Of a stretch of 64,000 nt of DNA, positions 5,930-24,409 are shown in pieces. A program made the translations under genes and the position numbers. This stretch comes from Octopus sinensis. Its lineage: Eukaryota. Position 1 is the first letter of the stretch. Every line of letters starts with the position of its first letter. The notes beneath the pieces were generated by a model that searched no databases, had not been told where the DNA came from, and saw only the letters and a list, made by a program, of their open reading frames with translations. The stretch is from the NCBI RefSeq assembly GCF_006345805.1, contig NW_021835962.1, positions 124,001 through 188,000 of the forward strand, in the 5' to 3' direction.

Positions 5930-7600
5930 CAGTGAACCCTCGCAAATTGGCCATTTTTGGTACATACAAATTTTATGGCCAATTTGAAACAAAATCAATA
6001 CCTACAAATATAATAAACACGTTTAAATTTTATTAAAAAAATTCAATCCCTAATTCCTTTTTATTGACTCTTTTTAACTTTGCTTTGTAATTTCTTAAAT
6101 GAGCGAAACATCATTCTCATTTTCTGCATTACAGTAAAGTTCCCTTTTTATTTCAGTTAATCTTCTTGCAATATCCTTTCTATTGAGTGGATATATGATT
6201 TTTGTCTCTTCGTCGCTACCTTCAAACTCTTGATCTTCTTTTAAACAATTTTTGTTTATATCTTGATCTATGCATTCGATATCTAAAAAATCTTCACTCA
6301 TTAAAAGATCGAAAATATCAGTTCTTTCAATTTCAGTGTCATAATGTTTAATTTATTAAATTTATTTAAAATCTTAAAACAATTTTGAATGGTTTCAGTA
6401 TATACGTCACCCCAACCCATAATAACAAACAAAATTGCATCTTTTCATGTCAATTTTTTGTATGAATTGTATAAAGAAATATTTTCAGCCTCCACCAAGT
6501 CAATTAAGTACTGGAGCTTTCTTCTCATGAAATGAGTCTTGAAAGTTTTTATAATTCCAATATCCATTGGTTGTAGTAATCCAGTAGAATTTTTAGGAAA
6601 AAATAAAATCTAAATACAATCCAAGTTTTGAGGAATAGAATGTGCAGGACAGTGGTCTATTAGCAATAAAATTTTCTTCTTTTCAATTTTAAGCTGAAGA
6701 TCAAAGCTAATAATCCAATCAATAAAAATAGATCCAGTCATCCAAGTTTTCTGCGAGCTATAATATGAAACAAGACATCCATAGTCAAAATTTCTAAAAC
6801 ATCTAGGCATTTTCGGTTTTCCGATCATCACAGGTTTCAATTCATGACTTCCGGTCATGTTTGAGCAAAGCATAATAGACACAAGGTCTTTAAAATTATT
6901 GTATCCTTGGAATCGGTTTCTGCTTTTCGATGGAATAAGCTTGTAGTATAATGCAATTTCATCTAAATTATAACTTAGATCAGGCTTATACAGTTTAGAA
7001 ATTTCTTTGAATTCTTCACGAAAGGAATTAATGTCAACTTCTCTATCAGTTCACATCTCTCCGTGTAATTTTGGCATTCTAAAACCGTCTCTTTTTGAAT
7101 TTTGCCAAATATCCATTAGAATTTTTAAGTTACTAAGTTGTAACTCTTCGGTAAAATGCGCAGCCTTACACGATATTAAGGAATTATTCAAAAAACAACC
7201 TATAAATTAGTTTTCAATTAATACCTTTAGACTCTATTGTATCCATTCGATCAATTTTTCTTCACGCGTAGGAAATTTTGGCAGCTTTAAACGAATTTTG
7301 ATAGATTTTCGAATCCCGTAAAATAGAGTTTTTATTAAGCAGTAGATTATTTATCGTCTTTCTCGAGATCGTCTTGCGGAATAAATGTGAAAATCTGTTA
7401 GCCATAAGCTGACACGAAACACTGTCATTTTCTTCCTTGTAGTTTATAATTTGTGTTTTATAAAGAAAATTCAGCCGAGTATAACGTCCACGAGAAATTT
7501 TATCAGACATGTGATTAAAAAAATAATCTATTTTCTAATTTTTATAAATAAAAAAATTAATTCAAAAATTGTGGCCAATTTGAGAATTGGCCAATTTACT
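5930..7600 (-). mobile_element. Degenerate pogo/Tigger DNA transposon (CENP-B HTH + DDE_1 transposase)
   Basis: TA followed by TIR CAGTGAACCCTCGCAAATTGGCCA at 5930. Transposase pieces 7262-7510, 6610-6882 (MLCSNMTGSHELKP..KTWMTG..LLLIDHCPAH) and 6095-6301, with frameshifts. 25-nt intron at 7200-7224. No outer TIR found at the other end. Confidence 0.88.
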
Positions 7601-8167
7601 TAGAAAATTGATTTTTTTCTTAGTTTAGTCAACGGTGTATTTAATTTTGGTGTATAAAAATAATAAAGGTATGTGGAGTACCTGCCATAATCACTCCGAA
7701 GGCTTCTTAATTGAATTAATTTAATAAAATACTTATCATTTGTTAGTTGTTTACAATCACTGTAGGTTATTTACTAAATTACTTTGTATTAAATCATAAT
7801 ATTAACGGAGATTTCCGGTTATCCAAAAATCTGCCAACATAATCAAACTCTCCATTCAACTTTGTAAAACCAACCACTCGGGTTCAGAAGTTAGGGTTCA
7901 GTTTGGTATTATTATCATGGCACTTTCACGAAAGCCAAAATGTTTATAGCTCCACACGTGCAAAGTTCAAAGAAACAATATTTATAGTTAGTTTTTTCCA
8001 TCTTCCTCCATCGAATGAAAGTGATCTCAACTTCTCCAGGGTGTCCCCCGTCTTTAGATTTTTTTCTCACGCGATTTAGATCTTTACGACAGTCAGAAGT
8101 GTCGATCTAAGTAGTCGCGAAAAAATTTGTCAAATTCTTAGTCCAAATAGCCTACATTGGCCATATA

Positions 8168-8950
8168 TCATATTATTGCTGATGTAAAACACATAAAGTT
8201 GTTGTGGATACTGGTAGTTGATATTCTACGTGACCACTCCATTCCGAGTAACCTCCTTAGTTGCCTTCTATGGAACGAATTCAGTTTCAATAGTTTGTTA
8301 AGGGACTCCCCGATGTCCCAAGGTTGTACAGTAAAATCGGTTTCACAAACGCGTTGTAAAGCCTGCATCCTGTGTAAATTCCAAGTGCCTTGGCTCTTAA
8401 CCATCCTTTCTTCAGTTTAGCCACTTCCGCATTTGCCAGTGTTTTCCTCCTTCGTAACGCATCAAAGAGCGACCGTGTTGAGATTATATCTATCCAGAGT
8501 CAATAAACAGACAGAAACTGATAAATGTGCTTGAGCAAATATTTAATGAATCGTCGGTTAGGATAATCAGAAATATATTTGTGTACACAAGACTATCTAT
8601 GTGGACAGAAGGATCAACTTTCCGCAGTTTCAAAACAACAATTGGGATACCGCAGGATGATTCCCTCACCACTTTACTATTCACCATATATTTTGAATCA
8701 GCACCCCGCGACCTCCGTAAGGCATTTTATGCAGATGATGTGGATTTCGTATCACGGGAAGTGATCGCACTCCAACACCCACTAGAAAATGCACCTGCAG
8801 AGGTCGATAAATAGTTTTTCAGCGTAAATGTAAACGTAAAATATAGAAATTAAAAAAGAAGAGAATATTACTCATGAAAGATGGAGATGTCTAATAAGCT
8901 TGGCTATCTACTAGGAGACACTGAAAATGTTCAGTTAAGTAAAACTTGAA
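8168..8950. mobile_element. Rearranged RTE-like LINE fragments
   Basis: Plus-strand RT piece GIPQDDSLTTLLFTIY..FYADDVDF followed by NKLGYLLGD. A minus-strand piece, LNSFHRRQLRRLLGMEW, is typical of post-RT regions. Confidence 0.65.
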
Positions 8951-9459
8951 ATTAGTAATCACTCAAACTTATTTTGGCAAGGATTTGATTTCCTGACAAA
9001 CTCTATGACAGTATATCTTATGTCCATATTGTTTCCCTCAAATTCGGCGATGATTTCTGCAACCAATATTCTCGCCCTACACGGCATGATTTCTGTTGAA
9101 TGACCGAATTGTCGCTCTCACGGCATAATGGCCAATATGTTTACTTGAATTATGTAGTTCTATTTGGGATATCACACATCACCGGCAAGTCACAACCCGT
9201 CAATTCTTTTACTGAAGACGTTTAGTTAAACAAAGCACGTCTGATAGTCACATTCTCTGGTTAGCTGTCATAACTTTAAAGGATTGTCGACGGCCTTTAA
9301 ATGGAATTGGTTCGCACAAATTTTTCCAATTAACATTGCCCGCGGACAAATTTACTAAAGTATTTATACATACATTTTATCTATTATTAAAAATTAAATA
9401 AATTTTTAAAAGTTTTAGTAATTTTGTTTGGTGAATTTGAATCTTGAATTATCCGAAAA

Positions 9460-10630
9460 GAATTAAAGATGTCCAAGTCCCCACGTTTAATCCAGATTGG
9501 ACTCATGAATATTTAGGATAATGAAAAACCTATATGTTTAATATGCTTCGAAAAAGTTGCTGTCCAAAACTTTATAACATTTAGCAATATTATGAATCTC
9601 TTCATTACGAAAAATTTAACAAGTTTACAGGAGAATTTTGCATAAAAGAAATTAAGAGTTTTGAACAAAATTACCAAAAGCAAACAACATTTTTTATAAT
9701 TTGAGGTGTAAAAAAGATGATATCACAAGCACAAATTACGATTCTATTGACGTGACCCTACGCAAAAAGGAATTCAGAGTTTTTAAACGTATCAGTCAGT
9801 TGGACTTACATACAGCATTACTTCTTCTACGGAATTGCTTTTCAATCCAAAAGCTCTCTTATTTGCTATGCTCTTCTCCGTGCTTTGCTTTTCCAGGGAG
9901 ACTATGCAATTCCCCCTGGAACAGGCGCAACCCTCCCGTTATTTTTTGGGGGTGTTGGCATCCGCTCATGTTCAGACTTATCGGTCCCTGCTTTTGTCTC
10001 GTCCGTCTCCTCGAGCCAAACACTTATCATGGAAATTCTACGCTCCTTTTCTGAATTTTCCTTGGACACAAATGTGGCTCATTTCAGCGAAGTCTGGAGG
10101 GAACAAGGTCTTGACTCTCCGGAAGATCGAATGTCTCAACGAGCCTGGGATCAAATTAGATGCAAGCAAACTTTCAATCTGCTGCTCGAGTCGTCCAACC
10201 AACACCGCCGCGCTTGCCTTCTGTCGGCAGCATCCCCGGCTAGTGGAGCTTGGCTTTGTGCATTCCCGAACGCCCCATCTGGCACTCTCCTTGACAATGA
10301 ATCGGTAAAGATCGGAATCTCTCTGCGCCCCGGGTTCCTCCGCAAGCTCGGGCCAAAATTTCCATGCGCACTCACGATCCTTGGGAGGTGGACTGGCTTC
10401 TTCAGTGGTTCTCGATCGCCGTTATCCGGGGGAACAGTTTGGCGATCCGCCAGGCTGCTGGCCTTCCCTTTGATTACGAAATATTAAAGATAATTGCGAA
10501 ACGAATGAAAACATTTTCAGACGGAGAATTTATTAAAGAATGTTTAATGACAGTAGCTGAAAATCTATTACCGTAAAAAAACATTTTTGAATCTATCTGT
10601 TTATCGCTAAGAACGGTGACAAGAAGAGTT
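9460..10630 (+). mobile_element. hAT (GTF2IRD2/SPIN-like) transposase N-terminal remnant, interrupted by a CRE fragment
   Basis: KPICLIC at about 9530. Removing 9742-10479 joins ITSTNYEILKIIAKRMKTFSDGEFIKECL, followed by SLRTVTRRV. Confidence 0.75.
9742..10472 (+). mobile_element. 5'-truncated, internally deleted CRE fragment with 7-bp target-site duplication
   Basis: LHTALLLLRNCFSIQKLSYLL, GGVGIRS, SGAWLCAFP..GTLLDNESVKIGISLR, then a jump to FLRKLG..RFSIAVIRGNS. Flanked by ATTACGA at 9735-9741 and 10473-10479. Confidence 0.85.
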
Positions 10631-11589
10631 TTTTCGAATTACAATTAATATTTTGAAATTTTTGTTTTTAGTAGACATAACATCACATATAAATGACATA
10701 AATCCGACTGATGTTCCGGCCCCTCCCATTTTACATTAAATTGTTCAGAAAATATTTTTTTGAGAATGTGGTTCTAATTATCATTGAAGAAGGACTAAGC
10801 TCGCCATAGCACGTGTCAACCAATTTCCACATTAAAATGATAGGACTTTCTTATTCCTTTAAAAATTTCATAACTTGAGTAATTTCTTTAACATCTAAAA
10901 ATAGACTTTCTTTTTTATAAATATTTTATTTTTCTTTAAAAGTTCTTTACACCTTTTCTTTATGATTATGGCAGAGAGAGAATTTAACATGATGTTAAAT
11001 CCTTTTAAAAGCCGGCATTGAAGCTTGTTTTCTTATGAATGATTGAAAAATGTTTTAAATAATCCAATTGAATCACAAAAGCTTGAATATAGAAAAAATC
11101 AGGAAAATGTTAACAAGTCCTCGATCAGTCGTCATTTTTGTCTCCTTCCAAACCACGCCAGAGTTTCCCCAATTCCCAGGTGACTCCTTAATCTATAATA
11201 TAAAACCACCAAAGTACGTGGCAACACTTTTTTCTTGGCATTAAGCTGAACCGGATCTTTCTAATGGAGAATCCATTAAAGTAGACGGAATCCGCTCTGC
11301 GACTGTTCAGACACAAACAGCGACCCAGCTTTGCAAATATCAGCACAAACCAGACGTCTACCTCTTCTCAGAATTATCAGCCTTTCCATGTCAATCATTC
11401 ACTCATACATAATCCCACGAAAATTTACTACTTTCAAATTCATTAACTGCAAAAAATATTTTCCCGCATTCATCTTCAGTGGCCTAATCCGACAACAATA
11501 AATAAATCGTAAAAAATTTTCCCAACACGGAAATCACCGAAGTTTGGGTTGGAAACAACTGTTTTACAAGAAAAGTCACCACAAGTACT

Positions 11590-12340
11590 TTAGGCAATAT
11601 TATTCATTTTTGGCGACATCAAAGAATTTATTCCTCGAGTAAGTGTATCTTTGACATCTGTAAGGTGAAGTTTAAGGGACAGAAAGTCCTGCTCAATCTG
11701 CCGATAAACGAGTACTGGACAGTCCCCAGTTCAGGAGACTCAACACAAAAGTACTGGATTGATTTAAAACCGAAGACATGAAGCACGACCATTTTGAGGA
11801 ATGAGAAAAGCCCGCAGTAGTCAGGTGATTCCGGCATAAAGAAAACCATCCTGCTCATTTTCAACCACTTTGAGTCGATCGAAGAAGTCAATGTTGTAAT
11901 TAATATGATAAACAGTCATTTCCCCTTGTTGGCCAAGGAATTATCCAAACGGTAAGTAGAACTTTCTGGGAATTTAAAGATCTTCCTTTGATCGACTCGA
12001 ACTGAGTGTCCACGTGGACTTACTCTCCGTAAAGTGACTCAAGACAAAGATAGAGCAGTACATCAAAGAGAAAATTCTCCACTTGTTTGACCAGCTCCTG
12101 ACTTTAAGCGAATTTACTCAATCTGTCCAATTGAAAGTCAGTGCCCTTCACAAAAACGGTCGACCAGGTCCCCGTCCGCCTTCAGGTTGTCAAGTACAGT
12201 GTAGAGATCTGCCAAAATAATGGTCATATGACAGCTCGCTTTACGGAGTTGTGCTAGTGGCACCAAATGTGGGGTTTCCCCATGGTTGCAGTGCCCTGTT
12301 CACTTTTGACAAGTCTTTTATTTACTCCTTCTTTGAGGTA
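11590..12340 (-). pseudogene. YARS1: Cytoplasmic tyrosyl-tRNA synthetase pseudogene
   Basis: Colinear minus-strand blocks GTATMGKPHI, TIILADLYTVLDNLKA, VFVKGTDFQL, ELVKQVEN..LLY, VDTQF, VDQRKIF, GLFSFLKMV, LHLTDVKDTL..INSLMSP match eukaryotic TyrRS in order. Several stops, frameshifts and deletions. Confidence 0.85.
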
Positions 12341-12456
12341 ATCGAATTATTAAAAAATATTTCTCATCAACGTTTACACCAAGAGAAACATTATTATTAT
12401 TAATTTTAATCAATTGATTTTTTGAACTAAAAATGTAAATTATTCGAATAAGTTAT

Positions 12457-13845
12457 ATGAAGCACTTATCTGAGAGTGCACTACTTATTCCTGACCAAGC
12501 CTGTATCCTCAATTTCATCACAGTAAAGCACGTACTGTCATTCGCCTTCCTCGACACAATCCTCATCTGTTTGCTGTGGTGCATATTCGTGATGGTCTGT
12601 ATTCCTACCCCAATATTCAGGTCAACAAACCAGAAGTTAGTTTTGCATCCGAAATAATCCATTATTCATTCAAGACGTCACTTTTTGACTTTGTGGTGAG
12701 TTTTTTAGTTTATGTCAGTGTCTTTCCGTGTTTAGGGGCCTCCTCATTTCCCTGTGGTTTTTCGTCACTTTCCGCTACCGACTGGTCCTTCTGATTGTAA
12801 TCGACTCCCTCAAACTTAGTCTCTCGCATTTGGGACGACTGCCATGATTGTGGTCAAAATACTAAAGTACTACATGTTCACTAACTACCCCTCATCACAC
12901 ATACAAGCACTCAGTTTTGTCATTCCAATCCTCCTTCTGAGCTTTGCACTCTCCTGGCTGCAGTTGTGGAAACTGTCCAGTTCAGACATCACCGATAACT
13001 CCAGTCGGGCGGAATACAGAGGGGACTTGCACAAAAACGTGCAGGACTGGCTGGATCAGTCTGACCTGGCATCCTTTTATACAGTCCAGAGCAAATCCGG
13101 CAGAGATAAGATGGTATTTTGTCGCCTGACAACTCGAGGACATGGAAGAAGAGAAAAAAAAAGTTTGGCAAGTCGTTTTGCCAATTTTTGATTCGACATG
13201 TTGGAATTCGTGCTACAATGAAAACCAAGTCTCGATCTGGTCGTTGTCTCACCCTGAATTGGGGGATATTTTCTGTGGAAGGGTATTTCCTAACAAACAT
13301 GAAAGACTACGATTTTGGCACCCCTCGAATTGATCGTGTCTGAACTGATTCATAACGTAGAGAACAGTGTCGTGTGGGACAAGTCGATTTCCTCCATCAA
13401 TGTAATTATTTCTGTCATTTTAGAGGCGTGTTTTATCAGAGGATTCTGACGTGGTTATGATGGTATCCAAGGAAGTACTGAGAGGATTAATCAAGTCGAG
13501 GTATTCTAATTATCTTATCAGGTCAGAGTATTCACTTTCCGGAGGACATGGCAATATTTCCAGACAGAGGCCAGTCGTTCTTGTGTGCTTGCGAGCATAT
13601 CAGTGGTCCCAGAAAATACGGTGACACAAGTGAGAGGCACGATCAAGCTGGGGACAGGCTTCCGCATAGTCACCCTCCCCGATAACCTCTCATGTGAATT
13701 GTCCGTATTCTCCAACATGGATTTTAATGTTCATAATTATTCGTCACCATTCTAGATGAACATTCCCAACTCTATTCTCCACCGCGAACTCAAGAAAGGA
13801 CTACACAAATACATTTTCTCATTTAAGAATCACATTGAACAATGA
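12457..13845 (+). CDS. STARD3: STARD3/MLN64-like sterol transfer protein (MENTAL + START), 397 aa, 9 exons
   Basis: GT-AG introns 12595-12620, 12696-12718, 12797-12819, 13114-13138, 13283-13305, 13402-13423, 13501-13526 and 13729-13755 give one frame. MENTAL motifs DTILICLLWCI, EIIHYSFKTSLFDFVCLSVFR, IPILLLSFALSWLQLW. START motifs PLELIVSELI..VWDKSI, SRVFTFRR, QVRG, SNMDFNMNIPNSILH. Confidence 0.9.
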
Positions 13846-13962
13846 TTATTAATATTTAAATAAACCAGACAATATTTCTTTCAGGGTCTAAGCTCGCATA
13901 TACCTGTCGTCGGAAGGCAATGTCAAAGTAAATTGGTTTGGCCAACGGTCAAACGAATCTTC

Positions 13963-14395
13963 CTAAAGCCATATGAGCACATGGTGTTCGTCAGTCAGTT
14001 TTTTCTTCATCATCATTTCGCTAGCAGTTAGGACTTGCTCAAGCTGTAGTTTAAATTTGGCGATTTTCCCCCTCATTGATTCTTCCCAGATACTCTTAGG
14101 CCTGATGTTGTTGGTAAGGCTTTCATATGTGCACTGTCCTGCATAGATAATAGCGGTAATATCGATGATATTTAAATTTGGCAGGGGACCAATATATTGC
14201 TTGATTGATGCGTTGATTCCATTTAAAATGTTCTTTTTCAACAGTTGTCTTGGAATTTTCCTGGTTGGGACACGGAGCTTCCTTCCGGTTGTTCGCCAAT
14301 TTGGAAACAAAATTCTTCAAAACATTTTCTAAAAATGGACATTTCAGGCCACATACACTCCTCGACAAAAAATGATTCCTCAACCTAAATTCCAA
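13963..14395 (-). mobile_element. Probable N-terminal remnant of an R4/Dong-like retrotransposon ORF
   Basis: Two overlapping frameshifted ORFs (ITAIIYAGQCTYESLT..PKSIWEESMRGKI) resemble the pre-RT region of the family seen at 16878 and 39905. Recognition is from memory only. Confidence 0.3.
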
Positions 14396-14596
14396 CTATT
14401 TTTGTTTTTAAATCCAATAACTGTTTTATGAATCACTATTCTTACAAAATAATAGCGTACAAGTGTTAGGGAATAAAGAATGAAATTACCAAAAACATTC
14501 AAACACAATTAAAATTATTTTAAATATATTAAATTGTTTATTTTATTAAAACGATTTAATTATTATAAATAATAATAATTTAAGGACACGTATTTA

Positions 14597-15694
14597 ATGG
14601 GTGTTGTGAAAAAAAGTAATATTATTTCATCCCTGTTTTATTTTATGGGAATATTTTCAAGTTATTTAATCTATGGATTTTTTCAAGAAAAAATGTTAAA
14701 ATGTTTTTTTATTATTTTGTAGAACAAAATCAGTTTATATTAGTTCGGACAACCTAAAGACAAGATTCGAATATACTCTCACTTTGGTGTTTTGCTTATG
14801 TTTGGCCTCACTCGTGGCAGCCATAATCGGTAAATGAAATCCATTGAGTATATTTTAGCAAATTATATTATGAACGGCAAAATATGTCAGGAAAATAATA
14901 TTCCTTTTTATTATTTTATATCATGTGGAGTAACGTATGTGGTGGCAATGCTTGCTAGTAATTATGCATTAAAATATGTCAGTTACCCAACACAAGTTCT
15001 GGCAAAGTCTGTTAAGCCAATTTCTGTTTTATTCCTTGGCGTTCTGATTGGGCGGAAGAGATACTCAATCCATAAATATATTGCTGTGGCAGTAATAGTA
15101 CTGGGAATCACCGTGTTCTTCTACAAACCCAATTATTCTAATTTTGAGTCAAAACAGTCGAATGGGTTATTTCCCATTTTTCTCCTGGTTTTTTCTGTTT
15201 TTGAGACTTAGATTATTTCTTTGTTGTTTGATGGCTTCACTGGTGGAATCCAAGACAGGATAAAGTCTTTTTACAAACTTGATCCACTTATTTTAATGTT
15301 CAACATGAATTTGTGGTCGTGTCTTATTCTTTTTTCGGGTACATAAAATAATATGTATTTTAGTCATTTCATTCACCGGTGAATTCACGCGTTTTTTGAA
15401 ATTTGTAAGAATTCACCCAAAATTGTTGGGGAATATAATTTGTGCTGCGGGGACTAGTTCGATTGGTCAGGTTTGCTCGGTTTGAATGTACTTTAGCTTT
15501 TTATATTCGGAACTATTGCACATTTAGGACCACTTGTGTGTTCTATATTTACTACAACTAGAAAATTTTTTACGATTGTTCTGTCGGTGATTGTATTCGG
15601 GAACGAAATGATGGTTCATCAATGGATTTCAACTGCGGTCGTTTTTATAGGCATTGCCTACGACACTGTCTTCGGGAAGGGGGGTCGTTTATGA
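14597..15694 (+). CDS. SLC35B1: Nucleotide-sugar (UDP-galactose) transporter-related protein with five micro-introns
   Basis: Introns 14695-14722, 14830-14858, 15188-15211, 15339-15363 and 15471-15496 give one frame: YLIYGFFQEKIT, SNYALKYVSYPTQVLAKSVKPI, LLFDGFTGGIQD, GPLVCSIFTTTRKFFTI, QWISTAVVFIG. Confidence 0.93.
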
Positions 15695-16877
15695 CAAGTC
15701 GGATAAATATTTATGTAGGAATTTTGAATAACCTTTTAAATATTATGTATGGTTTTTGAGGTGTTTGTTTGATACGAGTTTATATTTGTGGGCATCTGAT
15801 TATTCTGCATAGTTACTGCTCAGTAATATTATCAGATTAGTATTGCCAATCCATGATGCCAGGGATCACCAAAACTCCAAACCATGTAAATTATCGCGTT
15901 TGTGACTGAATAGTAATCCCAGGGTTTCCTAATAGGTTTATCGTAATTGCAAGGCTGCCTAACATACGGATTTCAAACATGAATGGACTTCCGGATGGGA
16001 CGTCACAAGCTTCCAAGCTTTGTAACAGCCGCACAGCAATCAAAAAGGAAACTTATAAGACAGACTCATAATTCGGAACTAATTAAAATAATTAACTTCC
16101 TTGTTCTCTTTTGTAAAATTCTCTTTGTGCAACTGCCGCAAACAAGACCTTAGTCACCTACGGGCCTCTACATGCGCTGGTTCTGTTGTGGGTGTTGTTT
16201 AGTGTTTAAATTGCTCGAAGTTTTGCTTGTGTTCTAAAGAATTAGGAATTCAAATTTGGTTCGAGTATTCCCATAATAAATACAAAAACTTAAATCAAAA
16301 ACTGCCAGTCGTATCGCAAATGTACAATCAGGTGAGATTAATCACAAGTATTACTTTGTCGATAAAGAAAATTATAACATCATACTCTACAGCAGAGGTT
16401 TTCAAATGATGAGGCGCGCATCCCTAACGAGTTTTTTTCCTTCATTCTGAGGCCACATCTTTATATTGAACAATTAAAATTAGAAATTTTACTGAAACAA
16501 AAAAAGCATTTAACAATCAGGTATCCTCAAATCGCCAGAAAATATAAGAGCAAAAAATTAAAAAATTAACTTTATTAAAAATTGTTGACTACTAAAAAGC
16601 ATCAAAATTAGCTACTTTCAAGCATATAGAAACTCTGTTGAGTATGTGAACAATTCTGGACGATCATCTCCGAGCTATTAGTAGCTTAAGTTACCAGTAC
16701 GTCTGATTTATGGAAAATAACTATTGTTTGTTGTAAGTTATAAAACCGGTTGATAACTCAAATTTATGATTCAAAATCAGACCTTATAACTTGAATTATT
16801 TAGTTATCATTTTGAGCAGAAGAAATCAGATTTTATCAATCCCCCCTTCGACCCAATAAAATTTTCTCCAACATTAA

Positions 16878-17307
16878 TTACTTAATTTTCCTTTCAAATA
16901 ACTCAGAGTTTAAAAGAGCGTAAAATATTGGCTTATGGGACGGGTCTTGCTGCCTCAGTTCGATGATAAAATTATGAAAGATATTGAGTTTTAATGAAAA
17001 AACAAACAACAACAGAGGCATACTGTCGCCCTGTAATATGCCCCTCTCTACCTTAACCTCGTATTTGTTGTAGTGCATGTTCCATCTGTCCATTACAGTC
17101 ACAACAAATTTATAAAGTAAGAAGGCAAATTGAGTCTTTGCAGATACTCAACAAGGTAGGCATGGTCATCTTCTTCACATCCACCCACATCGACACTAGT
17201 GAGTTTCCGTAGGCTCTCGCAAGGCATTTGTTGATCAGTGCCTGTTCCTTAGCTGGCTGGCAATCCCTCCAAGTACCTGACTGGTTCTCGAACAGAATTC
17301 CATTCAC
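16878..17307 (-). mobile_element. R4/Dong-like RT fragment with internal deletion
   Basis: AKEQALINK..LVSMWVDVKK (RT domains 2-3) and ERGILQGDSMPLLLFV (domain 4). Confidence 0.7.
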
Positions 17308-17479
17308 CTCAGATTTTGCATGAATTTAAATTATCTTAACTTTTTGCTTACTTAATCTTACCACTAACGACAAACTATTATTTATATTTAATAATTACGG
17401 GTTAACACATAAAAATGGATGTAACGCTGTTTTAATAAAAGGGGCCTAAATTAACAAAAATTATTGTTCTTTCTCAAAT

Positions 17480-18240
17480 AAACGAACAGAGGAAATCATT
17501 TGCTGTGGATGATTGCGTCGCCGTATGAGAAAAGCTGGGATTGCCATTGCCATCTGATGTGACCTGCCAATCGGAGTGGACGTCGAAAGTCCACGCCAAT
17601 ACGTTTTCATGCCTAAAGGAAACCATGGACCAGAGAAGGTTGGCTTGTTTACAAGCGGGCAGCCAGCCCCTAAGCGGCGCGTGGCTAAACTGTTACCCTT
17701 GTAATACAACTGGCTGCCTTCTTAATGATGAAGCCGTAAGAATAGGAGTTTGTCTGCGCCTCGGTCTACGCGTCTATGCAAAACACCAATGCCGGTGCGG
17801 AATGTGGACTGACGAGTTTGGATATCACTCCCTCTCATGTCGAAACGGAATTGGACGTTCCTCACGGCATTCCGAACTGAACCAGATCATCTGTCGATCT
17901 CTTCGAACTGCTGGATTCCACACACAATTGGAACCTGCAGGGATTTTCGTAGAGGACGGCAGAAGACCCGATGGGATGACCACATTTCCATTCCAGAGGG
18001 GAAAGTGTCTGGTTTGGGACGTCACGTGTGTGAACTCCTTTTCTAATCAGAATATCAAATTATGTCATTGAGACGTCAGGAATACAGGGGCCTTCTACTC
18101 GGACCCTACTTTAGCGCATTGCCTCATTAATCGAAAGGGTTACCGGCGACCCGTGTGAGCACCGGAATTTAATCGAAAGTATCTATAGCAATAGTCAGAG
18201 GCAATACTCTGGCTATCTGCCAATGACTATTTCTCTTTTG
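17480..18240 (+). mobile_element. CRE 3' fragment with internal deletion
   Basis: SGAWLNCYPC..LLNDEAVRIGVCLRLG..CRCG..H..C..RHSELNQII..EPAG..DGRRPDG..WDVTCV, then IETSG..GP and AIVRGN. Confidence 0.85.
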
Positions 18241-18506
18241 ATTTAAAATATATTTTATATCGTCGAGAGACGGTTAGTTTTATTTAAAATTTATTATTAC
18301 AATAATACGGTAAATTTAAGTAATGCGAATATATTGATTTTCAAAGTATTTGATCTAGTTTTATGATTTTTATATGAAATGAATGTCATTTAGACAATTT
18401 TGTATCAATTTATCATGATAGATCGCGATAATACCCGGATATCAACACTTATTACAATACGTTTTAATTTGTATTTTTAAACACTTATAAAAATGTCTCT
18501 AATCAT

Positions 18507-18685
18507 TCATTGAGACGTCAGGAATACAGGGGCCTTCTACTCGGACCCTACTCCAGCGCATTGCCTCATTAATCGAAAGGGTTACCGGCGACCCGTGTGA
18601 GCACCGGTATTTAATCGAAAGAATATCTATGGCCATAGTCAGAGGAAATACTCTGGCTATCTGCCAATGACGATTTTTCTCTTGA
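18507..18685 (+). repeat. Second copy of the last about 175 bp of the preceding CRE fragment
   Basis: TCATTGAGACGTCAGG...CTGGCTATCTGCCAATGAC is nearly identical to 18065-18240. Confidence 0.9.
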
Positions 18686-20139
18686 CCTAATTTGTTTAAA
18701 AAAATTATTGTAATTTACGTCTTGCAAACAATATAAGTACGTATTTGTCGTTCTGTAAATTATTAAACTACTTTGAAATGAAAACTTGTTTATATTAATT
18801 TCTTTCTGAAATTTGCTCAAAAAATGTCCTTATATAACATGGATTTGGATGTCGAATCAAACTGAACTTGCTAGAATGTAGAGAGAGTTAAAGGGCAACC
18901 CTAAGATGAGCGTTAAAAGTTCAGCCGCGTCTTAAGGCTGTACTACAACAACCCCAAGATCCTAGAAAAGAAAAAGAATAAAAGAACACATACACATTTT
19001 ATGATGAAATTTAGACCAAAAAATCCCTCTTGTAAATCTTATAAGAAATGTACGCGTATCCAGTGCTGATTTAGTAAATATGAGTCCCCACTCCCAGAAT
19101 ATTATTAAGATCTCTACAATATAAAATGTCACAGTCCAGACGTGCGACCCGTACAGACGCGTTACACTTGTGTGCTTAGAAAAAAAATTGATTTTGTCAA
19201 TAAAAAATTTATAAATTGACAAATACCCATTTTTGCCAAGCTAACAAACGAACAAGTTTATTGTAATTAACCGAGAAAGAGAAAGTGACAGGAATTAAGG
19301 ACGGTGATAGGACGAGACTGATGCCAAGGCAACTGAACTCTTCTGAGCTTGCGTCCAATTTATCTGTCGTGAGCCAGAGTTAATAGTGGCTATGTTGCTG
19401 AATTGCTCCCTTCTAGCAGGAGCTCTTGCTGCATATCCATATCCACTCCAAGTTTGGTCAGGGCTCCTACACAGCGGCGGAATAATTCCAGTTGGGAATC
19501 TCTGTTGTGTAGGTCCTGATCCAAGTGGGCACCCCTACACCAATGTATACTTCAATTATGATAAAATATGGAAATCAAAATAATTGTGTTTATCATATTG
19601 AAAATGCATTGATGCTGCGTCAAAATTAGTTCATAAACTATGTAGCCCAGTTATAATGTAGGCTTGTTTTTTACGAGAATTTCTTCTCGACGCGTAGAAA
19701 GCCAGGCAGTAAACCTCATATGTGTTTCTTTATACTTTTCAAATAATTTCTTTTATATTGAAATTACATCACGAAATGCAAATATTTCTACATCACTGAT
19801 TATTCATATTTTATTATTGTTTCTTTCTCGTGCATGGGAGTTTTTCGTTTTAGATGTAGCCTCAGAGTAAAGATACAATTTTATATTTTCATTATACTTT
19901 AATTCATAAAATTAAAAAATATACCCATGCAAGTTATTCTTCATGAACGAATAAAAAGTTCGCTCGTAACAGTTGTGGACCAGGAAATAATATAATGTAC
20001 CCGAGACCCAGCTGTAATCTAGGCTTTTTATTAATAAAAAAATTTCTTTCCCCCGTAGGTGAAGTTTTCCGAAAAATACAACAGCATTTGTTTACTATGT
20101 TCATTGTACTTTAATAACATGATATTAGAAAATATATTC

Positions 20140-21207
20140 TGTCACCGGCTGAATAATGCCCTGGGTTGGATAATGCCCCCTCAACGTTATTTTAAAAAAA
20201 TAAATATTTTTTCAAATTAATTTTGATTAGATTTTTTGATTTTCTTAATTATTTTAGTAATTTATCAAAGTTTTTTTTTCAAATTAATCTAGCGTGAAAA
20301 TTTGTTTTGGTTATCTAAGTTTTCAAATTTGAAAAATAATAAGTATATTCGATCAAATCTATATTTCAGAAATGGTTTTACTCAACTTTACTAAAGATGA
20401 ACTTGAAGTAATCAAAAATATTCAAATAGATGTTTTTTATATTGACCGATTTCAGAAATCTGAAAAGAAAAGATACAGATGAGGACACATTTTGGAAGAG
20501 ATAAGTTGCTTTCGATATTGAGAAAGGAAATTTATGCAGTAACCCGAGACGAAATTACTGCTGTGATCTCAAAATGCGTTCACTGTCAGGTGCATATGTA
20601 TTGAATTATTTTTAGTCAAAAAAGTTGATGGCGACTAAGCCAACAATCACTCCTATTATTGCAAGAGGGCCTAAAGATCGCTATATTGCAGATTTAGTGG
20701 ATTTAAGAAGGTATGCTAGCCTTAATAGCGATAATGGATTGGTATTTTTTTGTATAAATTGTAGTTGGTTGTGGTTATAGACCCAGAGCATTATCCAGCC
20801 GGTGACATGAAATATCGGAGGTTGATAAAAACAAGTGCGTACTTAAAGATCTTAATGACGAATCATCCAAATATGTACAAAAAGTCGTATAAAAAAAATA
20901 TGACTCTTATAAAAAATTTTTATATAATAAAAATTCATGAATTTTTAATATTTATTTTTAAATGGTAGACCTAAAAAATTGTATAATTATAATAAAATAC
21001 GTTATTGATTCGGAAAAATTTTTGATGCCGGTTTTTGCCGACTCTTTGAAAAATTTTTTCAATCAAAAAATTGATAAAAAATTGAATAAATCGACTTAAT
21101 TCCATTATCAAGTTATTTTTAATTAATTATCAGGTTATTTTCGTTTGATTTTAAAAAAAATTTTAAGGGGGTATTATCCAACCCAGGGCATTATCCAGCC
21201 TGTGACA
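20140..21207 (+). mobile_element. Internally deleted Ginger (integrase-type) DNA transposon
   Basis: About 42-bp TIRs TGTCACCGGCTGAATAATGCCCTGGGTTGGATAATGCCCC with TGT...ACA ends. 5-bp TSD TATTC (20135-20139, 21208-21212). Integrase pieces TRDEITAVISKCVHCQ and PIIARGPKDRYIADLVD. Introns 20590-20615 and 20742-20764. Extra partial right TIR at 20781-20807. Confidence 0.85.
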
Positions 21208-21288
21208 TATTCATACAAATTATTCCCGTGGGGTTCATATATTTTTTATTTATAGTAAAATTCTATTACATAATGGTTGTTTGCTAAA

Positions 21289-23157
21289 CAGTGACTCTTC
21301 TGAAATTGGCCACCTCTGAAATTGACCACACTTATAAAATTATCTTAAGAAAAATTCGAATTTCCATTGAAAGTGGCCAATTCTCAAATTGACCATAAAT
21401 TTTAAAATATATTTTATATAATTTGCAAATTAATAAAATTTCAGTTATTTTATGTCTTCGAACAATTCTCGTGGTAATTATACTCGTCTCACTTTTTATC
21501 AAAAAATACAGATTTTAACTTATAAAAATCAAAATGAAGATGTTTCATGTCAGTATTTGGCTGATAGATTTTCCCATTTGTTTAAAAAGAAGATTTCCAG
21601 AAAAACAATTAATAATATTATTTTGAAAAAGATTTTTTTCTCAAAGAGTGTAAAAAACAAAATCTATCTTCAAAAAATGCGCATAGACTCAAGTTCCCAC
21701 AGCTTGATGGTATGTTAGTTGAATGGATGGATTCGATTGAGTCTAAAGGTAATTTGTACTAATTTATGATTAAGGTGGCTTTCTTAATGATGCTTTAATT
21801 TCAAATAAGGCTAATTTATTCGCAGCTGAATTAAAACTGGATAATTTTAAAAACTCAAATGGATACCTTCATAAATTCAAAAAGAGGCATGGTTTTCGAA
21901 TGACCAAGTTACATGGAGAAATGAGAACTAATGATCCAGTAGATGTCGACTTATTTATCGAAAAATTCATAGAAATATCAAAGAGTTATAATGCCGATCA
22001 AATTTATAACTTGGACGAAACGGGATTGTATTACAAGCTGATTCCTTCGAAGAGTATTTGTAGAAACAGATTTCAAGGATATAAAAATTTCAAAGATCGT
22101 GTTTCTATTATGCTATGTTCAAATATGAGTGGAAATCATAAATTGAAACCTGTGATGATCTCGAAACCTAAAATGCCAAGATGCTTTAAATCTTATGACT
22201 ATAAATGTTTCATTGATTATTATAGCTCAAAACGAGCTTGGATGACAGGAACAATTTTTACTAACTGGCTATTAAACTTTGATTACCATCTCAAAAATGA
22301 AAAAAAGCAAATTTTACTTCTCATGGACAATTGTCCTTCACATTGTGTTCCATCAAATTTGGATAACATAAAAATATTGTTTTTTCCTTCAAATAGTACT
22401 GGTCTTATTCAACCTATGGATTTGGGTATAATAAAAACATTTAAAACACATTTTACTTGACACAAGTTAATGTATTTGACTGATTTGTTGGAACAGCAAA
22501 ATATTTCAGTATACAGTTCCTACAAAAAGTTAACTCTAAAGGATACTGTAATTTTCGTAAAAATGGCTTGGGAAGATGTGTCTGAAAAAACGATTGCAAA
22601 TTGTTTCGGAATTTTAAGCAACCCATTCAAAAAGAATCATGTAGTTGAAGTTCAAGATATTGCAGTAGAAAAAACTGACATTTTTGATCCCTTAGAAGTC
22701 GAAGAATTTCTTAATTTTGAATATTCTGAAAATGATACATTTCAAGACGTTGAGGATATTGAAAATATAAAAAATGAAGAAGAAGTAGAAGCTGAAGTAG
22801 AATCCAATGAAGTAGAATCCAATGATTCAATTGACAAAGAAGACATTGTGGTTAAGTTAACTAAAATTGAAAACGACCTCCTAAAAAACATTGAGAACGA
22901 ACATGAAGTTCAATTGATTACATCCATAAGGTGCTATAAGGAAAATGTCATTAAAACTCAAAAAAAGCAGATGGGCATCCAATTCTACTTTAAGAACATT
23001 AATAATGCTTAATTACTTAAAATTTTCTGGATAAAAGTTGTTCTTATTCAAAATTTAATTTACACAAAAGATTGATTTTATTTCTCAAATTGGCCATTTC
23101 TCGAATTGACCACAAAAACACGTGGAACCAAAAATGGCCAATTTCAGAGGAGTCACG
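21289..23157 (+). mobile_element. pogo/Tigger DNA transposon, near full length but with a frameshift and a stop
   Basis: TIRs (CA)GTGACTCYTCTGAAATTGGCCA at both ends. HTH pieces at 21452-21900. DDE_1 region (IYNLDETGL, AWMTG, MDNCPSH, QPMDLGIIKTFK) at 21900-22460. Acidic tail to 23012. 26-nt intron at 21749-21774. Confidence 0.92.
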
Positions 23158-24409
23158 TAGTTATTACTTCTTCAATTATTTCTTTTTTTGTTTAGTTACT
23201 TTCTAAAACATGCCGGTTTTAGCTTCCATAATCATTTTTAAAAATACTTCAACACCAGATTTGTATAGTTTACTATCGAAAAAATTGTGTTAAACATATT
23301 GAAAATGCATTAATGTATGGGGTCATTTAAAGAGCGAATACAAAGTTCGCTCATAATTTCGTATCATTTGTACCCCAGCTATAATGTAGGATTTTAAAAT
23401 AGAAAAATTTCTTTTCCTCGTAAGTGAAGCCTTCCAAAAAAATACAATCGCATATGTTTACTATGTTCATTATATTTTAATTACATAAATTAGAAAATAT
23501 TCCCGTAAGTTATCATATATTTTCTATTTATATTGAAATGCTATTACATAATCGTAGTTACCTAATAATTATTACATTCTTTATTATTCCTTTTCTTATT
23601 TGTTTACATAATGAAACAGCAGTTTTAGCTTTTATAATCATTCATTAGAAATACTCCAACAGCAGATTTTTATAGTTTGCTATCAATATAAACAATATTT
23701 TTGTCTCCATTCCAAGGGAAGTGTTAGCAGGCAAAAGTTTTCTCACTTTTTTTCTAAACTTTTGTTTAATAATAAATTTGTGAAATACGCTACATAGATC
23801 TTCAAAAGGTGGCCATTGATTATATGTTCATGTGAATGCCTGATCTAGCAACCCCACTTAGTTCTCGGGAGCAGTCTTTCTCGTGTTCTTTGTACTCACA
23901 CTCATTCACCACAAAATTTTCCAAGACAGGAGACTCGTCATTTCTTTCTAACTCTCTATTTCAGCTGGTATCTATGCCTTTGCCAATGGTCCTCAACTTT
24001 TCTCACTCTCCTTACGCTATGCTCACTCCATCAAAATTCTCCATGCCACAATGACGAACATAGTAGCCTACATACATCACTTTATCACCGACCACAACAA
24101 ACAACTGGAGATTTACCGCCAGTTTAGCCAGCTATTCCAATCCTATCTGGAGAAACAACTCCGACTGAATTCCACTTCAAGAGAGTCTCAGGTTCCTCAA
24201 GAACCAAGGAAGTAGCAGTGAGTCCTCTCTTTTTATTGACAGTGCTCTTCTAGGTCGTCTAATAAGGACAGTTTTTTTAAGCTTGAAATTGAAAAATATG
24301 AAGGCAATAGATTTCCAAGAAACTTTTTCCTTCGTATGGCTTGCCATTTAGAAGGCCTTCGATAGTATCTGGCACTTAGATGTTTTCAAAAGAATTTTAT
24401 AGGGTTTTC

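What the first reader, a model, noticed from the sequence alone, without database searches (positions are those of the whole stretch)
7200..21774. Position-conserved micro-intron inside a pogo transposase
Seen: both diverged pogo copies are interrupted at the same site in the CENP-B HTH, after GAGTCTAAAG. The introns are GTATTAATTGAAAACTAATTTATAG (25 nt, minus, 7200-7224) and GTAATTTGTACTAATTTATGATTAAG (26 nt, 21749-21774). Only GT, ACTAAT and AG are conserved. Splicing the second restores SIESKGGFLNDALI..GYLHKFKKRHG, while retention gives a stop. Inference: the transposon depends on the host's micro-intron splicing, and the intron predates the split of the two copies.
Basis: partly seen in the sequence, partly recalled or inferred. 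Interest (0 to 1): 0.7.

Follow-up and report, generated by a model that had tools for sequence, protein, structure and literature searches.

The report
Tiny host-sized intron in pogo transposon
Two old, diverged copies of a pogo/Tigger DNA transposon each carry a real 25-26-base intron at the same codon. The intron matches the ultra-short introns of the probable host, a dicyemid parasite of octopus, so this jumping gene needs that host's unusual splicing to make its enzyme.

Summary
Both pogo copies carry a GT..AG insert right after GAGTCTAAAG: 7224-7200 on the minus strand (25 nt) and 21749-21774 (26 nt). Removing each insert restores the local reading frame.

Five further informative copies, fetched from contigs labelled Octopus sinensis, have the same insert at the same site. 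Two of them are intact. They give uninterrupted 517-aa and 509-aa transposases only when the insert is removed, and they stop at codon 103-104 if it stays.

The two subfamilies are sister lineages and diverged under purifying selection in both exons (dN/dS 0.14, dS saturated). So the intron predates their split and was removed from the RNA throughout.

The relatives whose DNA I read (a microsporidian, a TARA scaffold, a Logan contig) read straight through the site, and a co-resident pogo family has an unbroken second HTH. The intron is therefore most simply a single gain.

The host is very probably a dicyemid such as Dicyema japonicum. A PROPPIN gene on a contig carrying this transposon has 22-, 27- and 23-nt introns.

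ACTAAT is not conserved: intact subfamily-B copies have ACCAAT. Both window copies are dead.

Introns in pogo are already known (55 nt in Drosophila), so this is a new variant of a known kind. No RNA evidence could be obtained.

The parts
21289..23157 (+). Copy 2: a full-length pogo/Tigger-like DNA transposon of subfamily A. It is a pseudogene.
   Evidence: 99.1% identical to L001 and 96.9% to L002 over 21299-23159. Its ends were defined by alignment with L001 and L002, where TIRs beginning CAGTGACTCC... are flanked by TA.
21289..21312 (+). Copy 2, 5' terminal inverted repeat (CAGTGACTCTTCTGAAATTGGCCA). It is followed by subterminal repeats of the unit TCTGAAATTG(G/A)CCAC.
   Evidence: L001 and L002 have three units of the subterminal repeat, the window copy has two.
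21452..21748 (+). Copy 2, exon 1: the ATG through the first base of Gly100. It encodes the N-terminal HTH and the start of HTH_Tnp_Tc5. It is broken by a 1-nt deletion in the A-run at 21626-21630.
   Evidence: L001 has one more A and an unbroken 298-nt exon 1. Pfam gives weak HTH_Tnp_Tc3_2 and CENP-B_N matches.
21749..21774 (+). Copy 2 micro-intron: 26 nt, phase 1, GTAATTTGTACTAATTTATGATTAAG.
   Evidence: Identical in L001 and L007, and 25 nt in L002 through a 1-nt deletion.
21775..23012 (+). Copy 2, exon 2: the rest of HTH_Tnp_Tc5, the DDE_1 catalytic domain and an acidic C-terminus, ending at TAA 23010-23012. It is broken by an in-frame TGA at 22458-22460, where other copies have CGA (Arg).
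   Evidence: The P0001 cluster members read ...THFTRHKL at this point.
23135..23157 (+). Copy 2, 3' terminal inverted repeat (one T is missing compared with L001 and L002), followed by TA.
5930..7622 (-). Copy 1: a subfamily-B copy with its 5' end lost or degenerate. It is a heavily decayed pseudogene.
   Evidence: About 90% identical to L003 and L004 by BLAST, and 93% over the gene region aligned with L004. The 3' TIR ...GGCCAATTTGCGAGGGTTCACTG plus TA ends at 5930, and no 5' TIR was found. There are ten deletions and four in-frame stops compared with L004.
7225..7510 (-). Copy 1, exon 1, carrying an 8-nt and a 4-nt deletion compared with intact L004.
7200..7224 (-). Copy 1 micro-intron: 25 nt, phase 1, GTATTAATTGAAAACTAATTTATAG.
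   Evidence: L004 has GTATTAATTGAAAACCAATTTTTAG (25 nt). L003 has 24 nt through a 1-nt deletion.
6020..7199 (-). Copy 1, exon 2 (HTH_Tnp_Tc5 remainder plus DDE_1), decayed.
   Evidence: tblastn gives 65% identity to copy 2 exon 2. Stops and indels are listed.

Best explanation
The two inserts are one and the same spliceosomal GT-AG intron of an autonomous pogo-superfamily (Tigger-like) DNA transposon.

The element (shown from sequence):
- About 1.87 kb long, with TIRs beginning CAGTGA..., TA target-site duplication and subterminal GGCCA-containing repeats.
- Catalytic triad D180, D284, D315, i.e. DD30D spacing.

The transposase gene (shown from sequence):
- Exon 1 is 298 nt.
- A phase-1 intron of 26 nt (subfamily A) or 25 nt (subfamily B) follows.
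- Exon 2 is about 1.25 kb.
- The intron lies inside the second CENP-B-type helix-turn-helix, at about position 20 of Pfam HTH_Tnp_Tc5.

Consequence (inferred):
- The 509-517-aa transposase can only be made if the host spliceosome removes this ultra-short intron.
- Unspliced RNA would give a 102-103-aa N-terminal fragment.

The host (inferred): a genome whose own genes have 22-27-nt introns, most probably a dicyemid such as Dicyema japonicum, the kidney parasite of Octopus sinensis.

History (inferred from the tree):
- The intron arose once on the stem of subfamilies A and B.
- It arose after that lineage separated from relatives that lack it, found in microsporidia and marine metagenomes.
- It has been kept at the host's preferred length while its sequence randomised.

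Both copies in the window are dead. The intron signal in them is inherited, not currently used.
For: Evidence that it is an intron:
1. The coordinates are right, and retention gives stops while removal restores the frame in both copies, although the lengths differ modulo 3.
2. Intact copies exist. L001 (A) gives a 517-aa ORF and L004 (B) a 509-aa ORF only after removal. Unspliced L001 stops after 103 codons, and L004 exon 1 is a 102-aa ORF.
3. All seven informative copies keep GT..AG at the identical site.
4. Spliced proteins give one contiguous HTH_Tnp_Tc5 match (residues 82-142, profile 1-64 of 66, 45.9 bits, against 34.1 bits and profile 23-64 for exon 2 alone), plus a full DDE_1.
5. Relatives align across the junction without a gap: IMESKGVILNDNLI, YMESKGTIITDFLM.
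6. A versus B: dN/dS is 0.14 overall, 0.17 in exon 1 and 0.10 in exon 2. pS is 0.69, i.e. saturated. Yet intron length differs by only 1 nt.

Evidence on its history:
7. A and B are sister lineages (100/100), nested in a clade (100/98) whose other members have no intron at the site. L005 Dictyocoela, L006 TARA and L009 Logan were read directly.
8. A co-resident pogo family at L008 12082-13434 also has an unbroken HTH_Tnp_Tc5.

Evidence on the host:
9. The L008 contig, which carries an A copy, holds a PROPPIN gene. Removing its 22-, 27- and 23-nt GT..AG segments yields a 397-aa ORF. The PROPPIN match is then 10-329 of 345 at 99 bits, against 55.8 bits for one exon.
10. Literature on Dicyema introns: 26.2 +/- 1.9 nt (PMC2222250); median 27 nt (PMC6543705); signals reduced to GTa...AG with a few weakly conserved A residues (PMC13644364).
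11. D. japonicum was collected from O. sinensis and has 36.7% GC and 48.9% repeats (PMC6736024).
12. The window is 28-47% GC and made of repeats.
Against: - No transcript evidence. No protein in the 5.8-billion-sequence collection spans the spliced junction for subfamily A or B. NCBI gene models all start downstream of the intron.
- The window contains no host gene, so its origin is inferred. The inference rests on 97-99% identical transposon copies shared with contigs that do carry a micro-intron gene.
- Those contigs are labelled Octopus sinensis. No sequence labelled Dicyema could be compared.
- ACTAAT, the only branch-point-like motif, is not conserved.
- Both window copies are non-functional.
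Confidence: 0.85

Rival explanations
1. The intron is ancestral to a wider pogo clade, and perhaps once longer. It was lost in the microsporidian and metagenomic relatives and merely shrank in the dicyemid lineage, rather than being gained on the A+B stem.
For: Microsporidia are known for massive intron loss (general knowledge). The relatives in the protein collections are biased towards uninterrupted ORFs, because intron-bearing copies would be called as fragments. The founding pogo of Drosophila also has one short intron (bioRxiv 10.1101/2023.05.27.542554, citing Tudor et al. 1992), whose position I could not compare.
Against: A+B is nested among at least four separate lineages that read straight through the site or whose predicted proteins are continuous across it: P0160; P0162; P0004/P0158; P0003/P0005/P0007. 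The next clades out are the same. This scenario therefore needs several independent exact losses against one gain. L005, L006 and L009 were checked at DNA level.
Confidence: 0.12
2. The contigs, and the window, are genuine octopus DNA. The element moved horizontally from the dicyemid parasite into its host genome, where a 25-26-nt intron cannot be spliced, so the copies are dead on arrival.
For: All close copies are in assembly GCA_006345805.1, labelled Octopus sinensis, on contigs up to 522 kb. A cadherin-domain ORF lies about 9 kb from the L007 copy, and octopuses have many protocadherins (general knowledge).
Against: The L008 contig carries a PROPPIN gene with three 22-27-nt introns. This is a host-type gene of a micro-intron organism, not a transposon. 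It has no detectable close homologue in the collection, octopus included. No protein named from another cephalopod appeared among the hits listed or the clusters looked up, although the two subfamilies are anciently diverged. Intact copies and copies 97-99% identical to each other indicate recent activity, which needs splicing.
Confidence: 0.06
3. The insert is not removed at all. Either it is a shared frame-breaking insertion in a lineage mobilised in trans, or the two ORFs are expressed separately or joined by ribosomal frameshifting or bypassing.
For: No RNA evidence for splicing was available. Gene models in the public annotation start downstream of the insert.
Against: Both ORFs stayed under purifying selection while synonymous sites saturated. 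The insert splits a single DNA-binding domain, which is matched as one piece only after removal. GT and AG are kept in 7 of 7 copies. The two lengths (25 and 26 nt) would need different frameshifts (+1 and +2). Each insert holds a stop in the incoming frame.
Confidence: 0.03

Closest known systems
Drosophila melanogaster pogo, the founding member of the pogo superfamily
   Same: A DNA transposon whose transposase is split into two ORFs by one short spliceosomal intron. The intron must be removed to give a single continuous ORF. Its length (55 nt) is close to the host's minimal intron size (bioRxiv 10.1101/2023.05.27.542554, citing Tudor et al. 1992). The superfamily features also match: TA duplication, TIRs, CENP-B-type HTH and a DDD catalytic domain.
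   Different: Here the intron is 25-26 nt, below the roughly 30-nt limit usually quoted for animals. Whether the position is homologous was not tested. The closest relatives of the present family have no intron at the site.
Intron-bearing Tc1-mariner and pogo elements of fungi (for example TcMar-Pogo of Sclerotinia sclerotiorum, PMC4188875) and TLEWI Tc1-like elements of bivalves (bioRxiv 10.1101/656579)
   Same: GT-AG introns inside transposase genes. Copies transpose with the intron in place. Dependence on host splicing is discussed as a possible control point.
   Different: Those introns are 124-276 nt or longer. Some are optional, so that retention still gives a complete protein. TLEWI lack TIRs and look domesticated. 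Here retention is always terminating, and the elements have intact TIRs and near-identical copies.
Ultra-short spliceosomal introns of dicyemid genes (Dicyema japonicum, D. acuticephalum, Dicyema sp.)
   Same: Length 25-26 nt, against 26.2 +/- 1.9 nt (PMC2222250) and a median of 27 nt (PMC6543705). The 5' end is GTA, the 3' end is AG, there is no polypyrimidine tract, and there are A residues in the middle (PMC13644364).
   Different: Published dicyemid introns sit at positions conserved with other animals, i.e. they are old introns that shrank. This one sits in a mobile element, and its nearest relatives lack it, so it appears to be a new intron.
Tigger and pogoR families of the pogo superfamily (Gao et al. 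2020, PMC7386202)
   Same: DDE_1 plus HTH_Tnp_Tc5 architecture, TA duplication, and DD30D spacing, which falls within Tigger (DD29-36D), pogoR (DD29-59D/E) and Lemi (DD29-42D). NCBI names the fragments 'tigger transposable element-derived protein 6-like'.
   Different: No phylogeny against the reference families was made here, so family-level placement is open. The closest named relatives are from the microsporidian Dictyocoela muelleri (44-53% identity).

Membership tests
pogo superfamily of IS630-Tc1-mariner DNA transposons | DDE_1-type catalytic domain with a D,D,D triad | tested here: met
   Pfam DDE_1 matched 1-177 of 177, E 2e-41 (A) and 2e-43 (B). The inferred triad is D180, D284, D315, spacing DD30D.
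pogo superfamily of IS630-Tc1-mariner DNA transposons | Two N-terminal CENP-B-type helix-turn-helix DNA-binding domains | tested here: inconclusive
   The second HTH (HTH_Tnp_Tc5) is met at 45.9 bits against a cut-off of 22.2. The first HTH gives only sub-threshold CENP-B_N (17.4 against 21.2) and HTH_Tnp_Tc3_2 (19 against 31.5) matches.
pogo superfamily of IS630-Tc1-mariner DNA transposons | Terminal inverted repeats flanked by a TA target-site duplication | tested here: met
   L001 and L002 read TA-CAGTGACTCC...GGAGTCACTG-TA. L003 and L004 read TA-CAGTGAATCC...GGATTCACTG-TA. Window copy 2 has TA only at its 3' side, and window copy 1 lacks the 5' end.
U2-type spliceosomal (GT-AG) intron | GT at the 5' end and AG at the 3' end, at a position where removal restores a conserved ORF | tested here: met
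   7 of 7 informative copies. ORFs of 517 and 509 aa after removal. Gap-free alignment with relatives that have no insert at the site.
U2-type spliceosomal (GT-AG) intron | Actually removed from the RNA | not testable with these tools
   No RNA-seq access. No junction-spanning protein in the collection. Supported only indirectly, by purifying selection on both exons.
U2-type spliceosomal (GT-AG) intron | Branch-point signal | tested here: inconclusive
   ACTAAT is present in A copies and in window copy 1, but is ACCAAT in L003 and L004. The three PROPPIN introns lack it. A residues at positions 13-14 from the 5' end are shared by both subfamilies. The literature reports only weakly conserved A residues in D. 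japonicum (PMC13644364).
Dicyemid (Dicyema) nuclear genome as the host | Host genes with introns of about 22-30 nt bounded by GTa..AG | tested here: met
   The PROPPIN gene at L008 1195-2463 has introns of 22, 27 and 23 nt. The spliced product matches PROPPIN 10-329 of 345 at 99 bits.
Dicyemid (Dicyema) nuclear genome as the host | Sequence identity with a genome or transcriptome labelled Dicyema | not testable with these tools
   No Dicyema-labelled sequence was returned by any search. The link rests on the host-parasite association O. sinensis - D. japonicum (PMC6736024) and on intron size.
Dicyemid (Dicyema) nuclear genome as the host | Standard genetic code and metazoan gene content, which would exclude ciliate renal parasites | tested here: met
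   ORFs of 509-517 codons contain no in-frame TAA or TAG and end at TAA. There is a cadherin-domain ORF on L007. The window holds RT ORFs of 978-993 aa and a PIF1-helicase fragment.

The most novel reading that the evidence does not exclude
The intron was created de novo, at or near its present 25-26-nt size, inside a transposon that had entered the dicyemid lineage horizontally. Its nearest relatives are in microsporidia and marine metagenomes. If so, it is a datable example of intron gain in an animal otherwise known only for shrinking ancestral introns. It would also act as a host lock. Such a short intron is expected to be unspliceable in ordinary animals, including the octopus host, so the element could spread only among genomes with a micro-intron spliceosome. 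Partial retention would yield a 102-103-aa DNA-binding fragment that could damp transposition.
Probability: 0.25. Interest if true: 0.6.

Novelty: new variant of a known kind. Interest (0 to 1): 0.45.

Why it matters
Introns shorter than about 30 nt were long thought absent from animals, and dicyemids are one of only two animal groups known to have them.

This finding shows that a mobile element living in such a genome carries an intron of exactly the host's preferred size. The intron has been held at that size while its sequence randomised, and it is most simply explained as a gain.

That provides three things:
- A natural reporter for what a micro-intron spliceosome minimally needs (GTA, about 25 nt, AG).
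- A rare candidate for recent intron gain in a lineage that otherwise shrinks its introns.
- A possible mechanism limiting horizontal spread of the element.

There is also a practical point. At least eight RefSeq proteins annotated as Octopus sinensis 'tigger/jerky-like' very probably derive from co-assembled parasite DNA, and gene finders miss the first exon.

Tried and rejected
- An exact-sequence look-up of the window's 993-aa RT ORF, to find the source record, found nothing on record.
- A window-wide scan for other frame-restoring 20-34-nt GT..AG segments gave 60 candidates. Longer length classes gave 45-58, so the scan was not discriminating. The window holds no recognisable host gene.
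- A second upstream intron, to explain the exon-1 frame change in both window copies, was rejected. L001 and L004 have a single unbroken 298-nt exon 1. The window copies carry a 1-nt deletion (A) and 8- plus 4-nt deletions (B).
- A tandem-duplication origin of the intron from adjoining exon sequence could not be shown. By eye, 8 of 26 positions match the following exon bases, and synonymous sites are saturated anyway.
- Searching the spliced PROPPIN protein for a named Dicyema or octopus homologue gave no hit at E <= 1e-5.
- The cadherin ORF pair on L007 can be joined by any of four 20-26-nt GT..AG segments, so no unique intron could be called.
- Rfam and tRNA scans of the window returned nothing.
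- The position of the Drosophila pogo intron could not be compared, because the primary papers are not held.
- An oligohymenophorean-type ciliate renal parasite as host was rejected on the standard genetic code and the metazoan-type genes.


Full report
**1. Observation**

- On the minus strand, 7224..7200 reads GTATTAATTGAAAACTAATTTATAG (25 nt).
- On the plus strand, 21749..21774 reads GTAATTTGTACTAATTTATGATTAAG (26 nt).
- Each directly follows GAGTCTAAAG.

The two surrounding elements align over about 1.3 kb at 69% DNA identity. Exon 2 is 65% identical in protein.

Reading through copy 2 gives ...SIESKGNLY*. Removing the 26 nt joins SIESK to GGFLNDALIS.... In copy 1 the incoming frame gives TIESKGIN*, and removing 25 nt joins it to GCFLNNSLIS. 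The two lengths differ modulo 3, but each fits its own copy.

Pfam places the downstream piece at HTH_Tnp_Tc5 positions 23-64 followed by DDE_1.

**2. State of the two window copies**

Both are dead.
- Copy 2 (21289-23157) has an in-frame TGA at 22458-22460 where other copies have CGA. It also has a 1-nt deletion in an A-run at 21626-21630, which shifts exon 1.
- Copy 1 (about 7622-5930, minus strand) has lost its 5' end. Compared with an intact relative it has ten deletions and four in-frame stops.
- The exon-1 frame changes I first suspected of marking a second intron are these simple deletions.

**3. More copies**

An HMMER search with the 227-aa exon-2 piece found near-identical proteins. 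They are RefSeq 'tigger/jerky-like' models of Octopus sinensis, assembly GCA_006345805.1. None of those models includes exon 1.

I fetched six of the encoding loci.

| Locus | Subfamily | Similarity | Insert at the site |
|---|---|---|---|
| Window copy 2 | A | - | 26 nt |
| L001 | A | 99.1% to copy 2 | 26 nt |
| L002 | A | 96.9% to copy 2 | 25 nt (1-nt deletion) |
| L007 | A | 98.5% to copy 2 | 26 nt |
| L008 | A | 96.8% to copy 2 | site removed by an internal deletion |
| Window copy 1 | B | - | 25 nt |
| L003 | B | about 90% to copy 1 | 24 nt (1-nt deletion) |
| L004 | B | about 90% to copy 1 | 25 nt |

Identities are, inserts. All seven informative copies carry a GT..AG insert at the same phase-1 position.

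Two copies are intact.
- L001 gives a 517-aa ORF from its ATG once the 26 nt are removed, and stops after 103 codons otherwise.
- L004 gives a 509-aa ORF once its 25 nt are removed.

The spliced proteins match HTH_Tnp_Tc5 in a single stretch (profile 1-64 of 66) and DDE_1 in full. The element ends are TA-CAGTGA...TCACTG-TA, with subterminal GGCCA-containing repeats. The inferred catalytic triad is D180, D284, D315, i.e. DD30D.

**4. Is it spliced?**

There is no direct RNA evidence. The indirect case is strong.
- Between L001 and L004, synonymous sites are saturated (pS 0.69, dS about 1.9).
- dN/dS is 0.14 overall, 0.17 in exon 1 and 0.10 in the core of exon 2.
- Both exons therefore encoded a selected protein throughout the divergence.
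- The domain cut by the insert needs both halves.
- Over the same time the insert lost all similarity except GTA at the start and AG at the end, yet its length changed by only one base.

This is the behaviour of an intron under a length constraint. It is not the behaviour of a frame-breaking insertion or a frameshift site.

**5. The ACTAAT motif**

It is present in subfamily A and in window copy 1. The intact B copies have ACCAAT, and the three host-gene introns found below lack it. It is not a conserved signal.

This agrees with a 2026 survey of D. japonicum introns (PMC13644364). That survey found the signals reduced to GTa...AG plus two or three weakly conserved A residues.

**6. Gain or shrinkage**

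The relatives whose DNA I could read have no insert at the site.
- Dictyocoela muelleri (L005): a single 510-aa ORF, ...IMESKGAIINDN...
- A TARA Oceans scaffold (L006): 519 aa.
- A Logan contig (L009): 56% identity.

Other full-length relatives are uninterrupted 517-534-aa ORFs on contigs of about 1.9 kb.

In a maximum-likelihood tree, A and B are sister lineages (100/100) on a long stem. They sit inside a well-supported clade (100/98) of these relatives. A more distant pogo family on the same contig as L008 (34% identity) also has an unbroken HTH_Tnp_Tc5.

One gain on the A+B stem is the most parsimonious reading. Several exact losses are the alternative.

**7. The host**

The window is entirely repeats and holds no host gene.
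- Two PHD-plus-RT ORFs.
- Another RT ORF.
- A PIF1-helicase fragment.
- A 95-bp satellite.

On the L008 contig, about 8 kb from a subfamily-A copy, lies a compact PROPPIN/WIPI-like gene. Removing three GT..AG segments of 22, 27 and 23 nt gives a 397-aa ORF. Its PROPPIN match becomes one stretch, 10-329 of 345, at 99 bits, against 55.8 bits for the largest exon alone. It has no close homologue in the collection.

So these 'octopus' contigs come from an organism whose own genes have micro-introns. The standard genetic code and a cadherin-domain ORF point to an animal.

Among animals, only dicyemids and some myxozoans have such introns (PMC13644364). Dicyema japonicum lives in the renal sacs of O. 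sinensis. Its genome has 36.7% GC and 49% repeats (PMC6736024), with introns of 26.2 +/- 1.9 nt (PMC2222250).

I conclude that the host is very probably a dicyemid, and that the contigs are co-assembled parasite DNA. A parasite-to-octopus transfer is a minor alternative that read mapping would settle.

**8. Comparison with what is known**

Introns inside Tc1-mariner and pogo transposases are known.
- Drosophila pogo has a 55-nt intron whose removal fuses its two ORFs (bioRxiv 10.1101/2023.05.27.542554, citing Tudor et al. 1992).
- Fungal elements have introns of 124-276 nt (PMC4188875).
- Bivalve TLEWI elements have two to five introns (bioRxiv 10.1101/656579).

The new points here are these.
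- The size (25-26 nt).
- The match to an extreme host intron class.
- The evidence for gain within the resident lineage.
- The length conservation after sequence saturation.

I rate it a new variant of a known kind.

**9. Verdict**

The correction is that ACTAAT is not conserved and that both window copies are pseudogenes.

My confidence in the spliceosomal micro-intron explanation is 0.85. Interest is 0.45: a clear, well-supported case of moderate surprise, with a useful side result about mislabelled parasite sequence in an octopus assembly.

Noticed in passing
L001-L004, L007, L008 (GCA_006345805.1 contigs VCDQ01011782.1, VCDQ01010602.1, VCDQ01003981.1, VCDQ01010770.1, VCDQ01005863.1, VCDQ01001784.1): RefSeq proteins annotated as Octopus sinensis 'tigger transposable element-derived protein 6-like' or 'jerky homolog-like' (XP_029656955.1, XP_029656046.1, XP_029657973.1 and others) sit on contigs that look like co-assembled dicyemid DNA. 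All the models miss exon 1, because the 25-26-nt intron was not recognised. One model (P0002) is a chimera with an integrase-like N-terminus.
   Followed up: partly
L008 1195-2463 (+): A compact PROPPIN/WIPI-like gene with three GT..AG micro-introns: 1516-1537 (22 nt), 1739-1765 (27 nt) and 2281-2303 (23 nt). The spliced 397-aa product has no homologue at E <= 1e-5 in the word-indexed search, so the protein is very divergent.
   Followed up: yes
L007 19012-20636 (-): Two overlapping ORFs in different frames encode a cadherin-domain protein. They can be joined by any of four 20-26-nt GT..AG segments, so a micro-intron is likely, but its exact ends are ambiguous.
   Followed up: partly
L008 12082-13434 (+): A second, distant pogo family (34% identity to subfamily A). 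It has an uninterrupted 451-aa ORF with an unbroken HTH_Tnp_Tc5, and resides in the same genome.
   Followed up: partly
L008 about 9480-10525: This subfamily-A copy has an internal deletion running from exon 1 into exon 2 that removes the intron region. It is a non-autonomous deletion derivative.
   Followed up: no
window 45857-58792 and 61436-64000: A 95-bp satellite with 136 and 27 copies at 97-98% identity and a strong GC skew of +0.24. The array is interrupted at about 58.8-61.4 kb by a segment holding a 543-aa reverse-transcriptase ORF (59568-61199).
   Followed up: no
window 1570-4551 (+) and 26637-29573 (+): Two long intact ORFs (993 and 978 aa), each with an N-terminal PHD finger followed by an RVT_1 reverse transcriptase. 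They lie in segments of 43-47% GC, against about 30% around them. They may be active retroelements of an unusual architecture.
   Followed up: no
window 44339-45043 (-); L008 10639-11226 (-): PIF1-like helicase fragments that are 83% identical between the window and L008, probably Helitron remnants.
   Followed up: no
window 21289-21400 and 23080-23157; L001 and L002 5' ends: Subterminal direct and inverted repeats of TCTGAAATTG(G/A)CCAC in subfamily A and CTCGCAAATTGGCCA in subfamily B. These are probably transposase binding sites. The number of 5' units differs between copies: two in the window, three in L001 and L002.
   Followed up: no
P0004, P0010, P0158 (Dictyocoela muelleri); L006 (TARA_SAMEA2731618 scaffold); L009 (Logan SRR33639317): The closest relatives of this dicyemid transposon are in a microsporidian parasite of amphipods and in marine metagenome or read-assembly contigs of about 1.4-1.9 kb (whole elements). 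This hints at horizontal transfer among marine parasites and their hosts.
   Followed up: partly
window 20807-21208 versus L003 6002-6394: The sequence just 5' of window copy 2 is 93.5% identical to the sequence just 3' of the subfamily-B copy in L003. The two pogo subfamilies therefore sit next to the same repeat family in different places.
   Followed up: no
L007 about 12500-18800: A stretch with long ORFs open in several frames on both strands. The Pfam hits there (HrpB7, DHR-2) have no significant individual stretch. It looks like low-complexity or repetitive sequence rather than genes.
   Followed up: no
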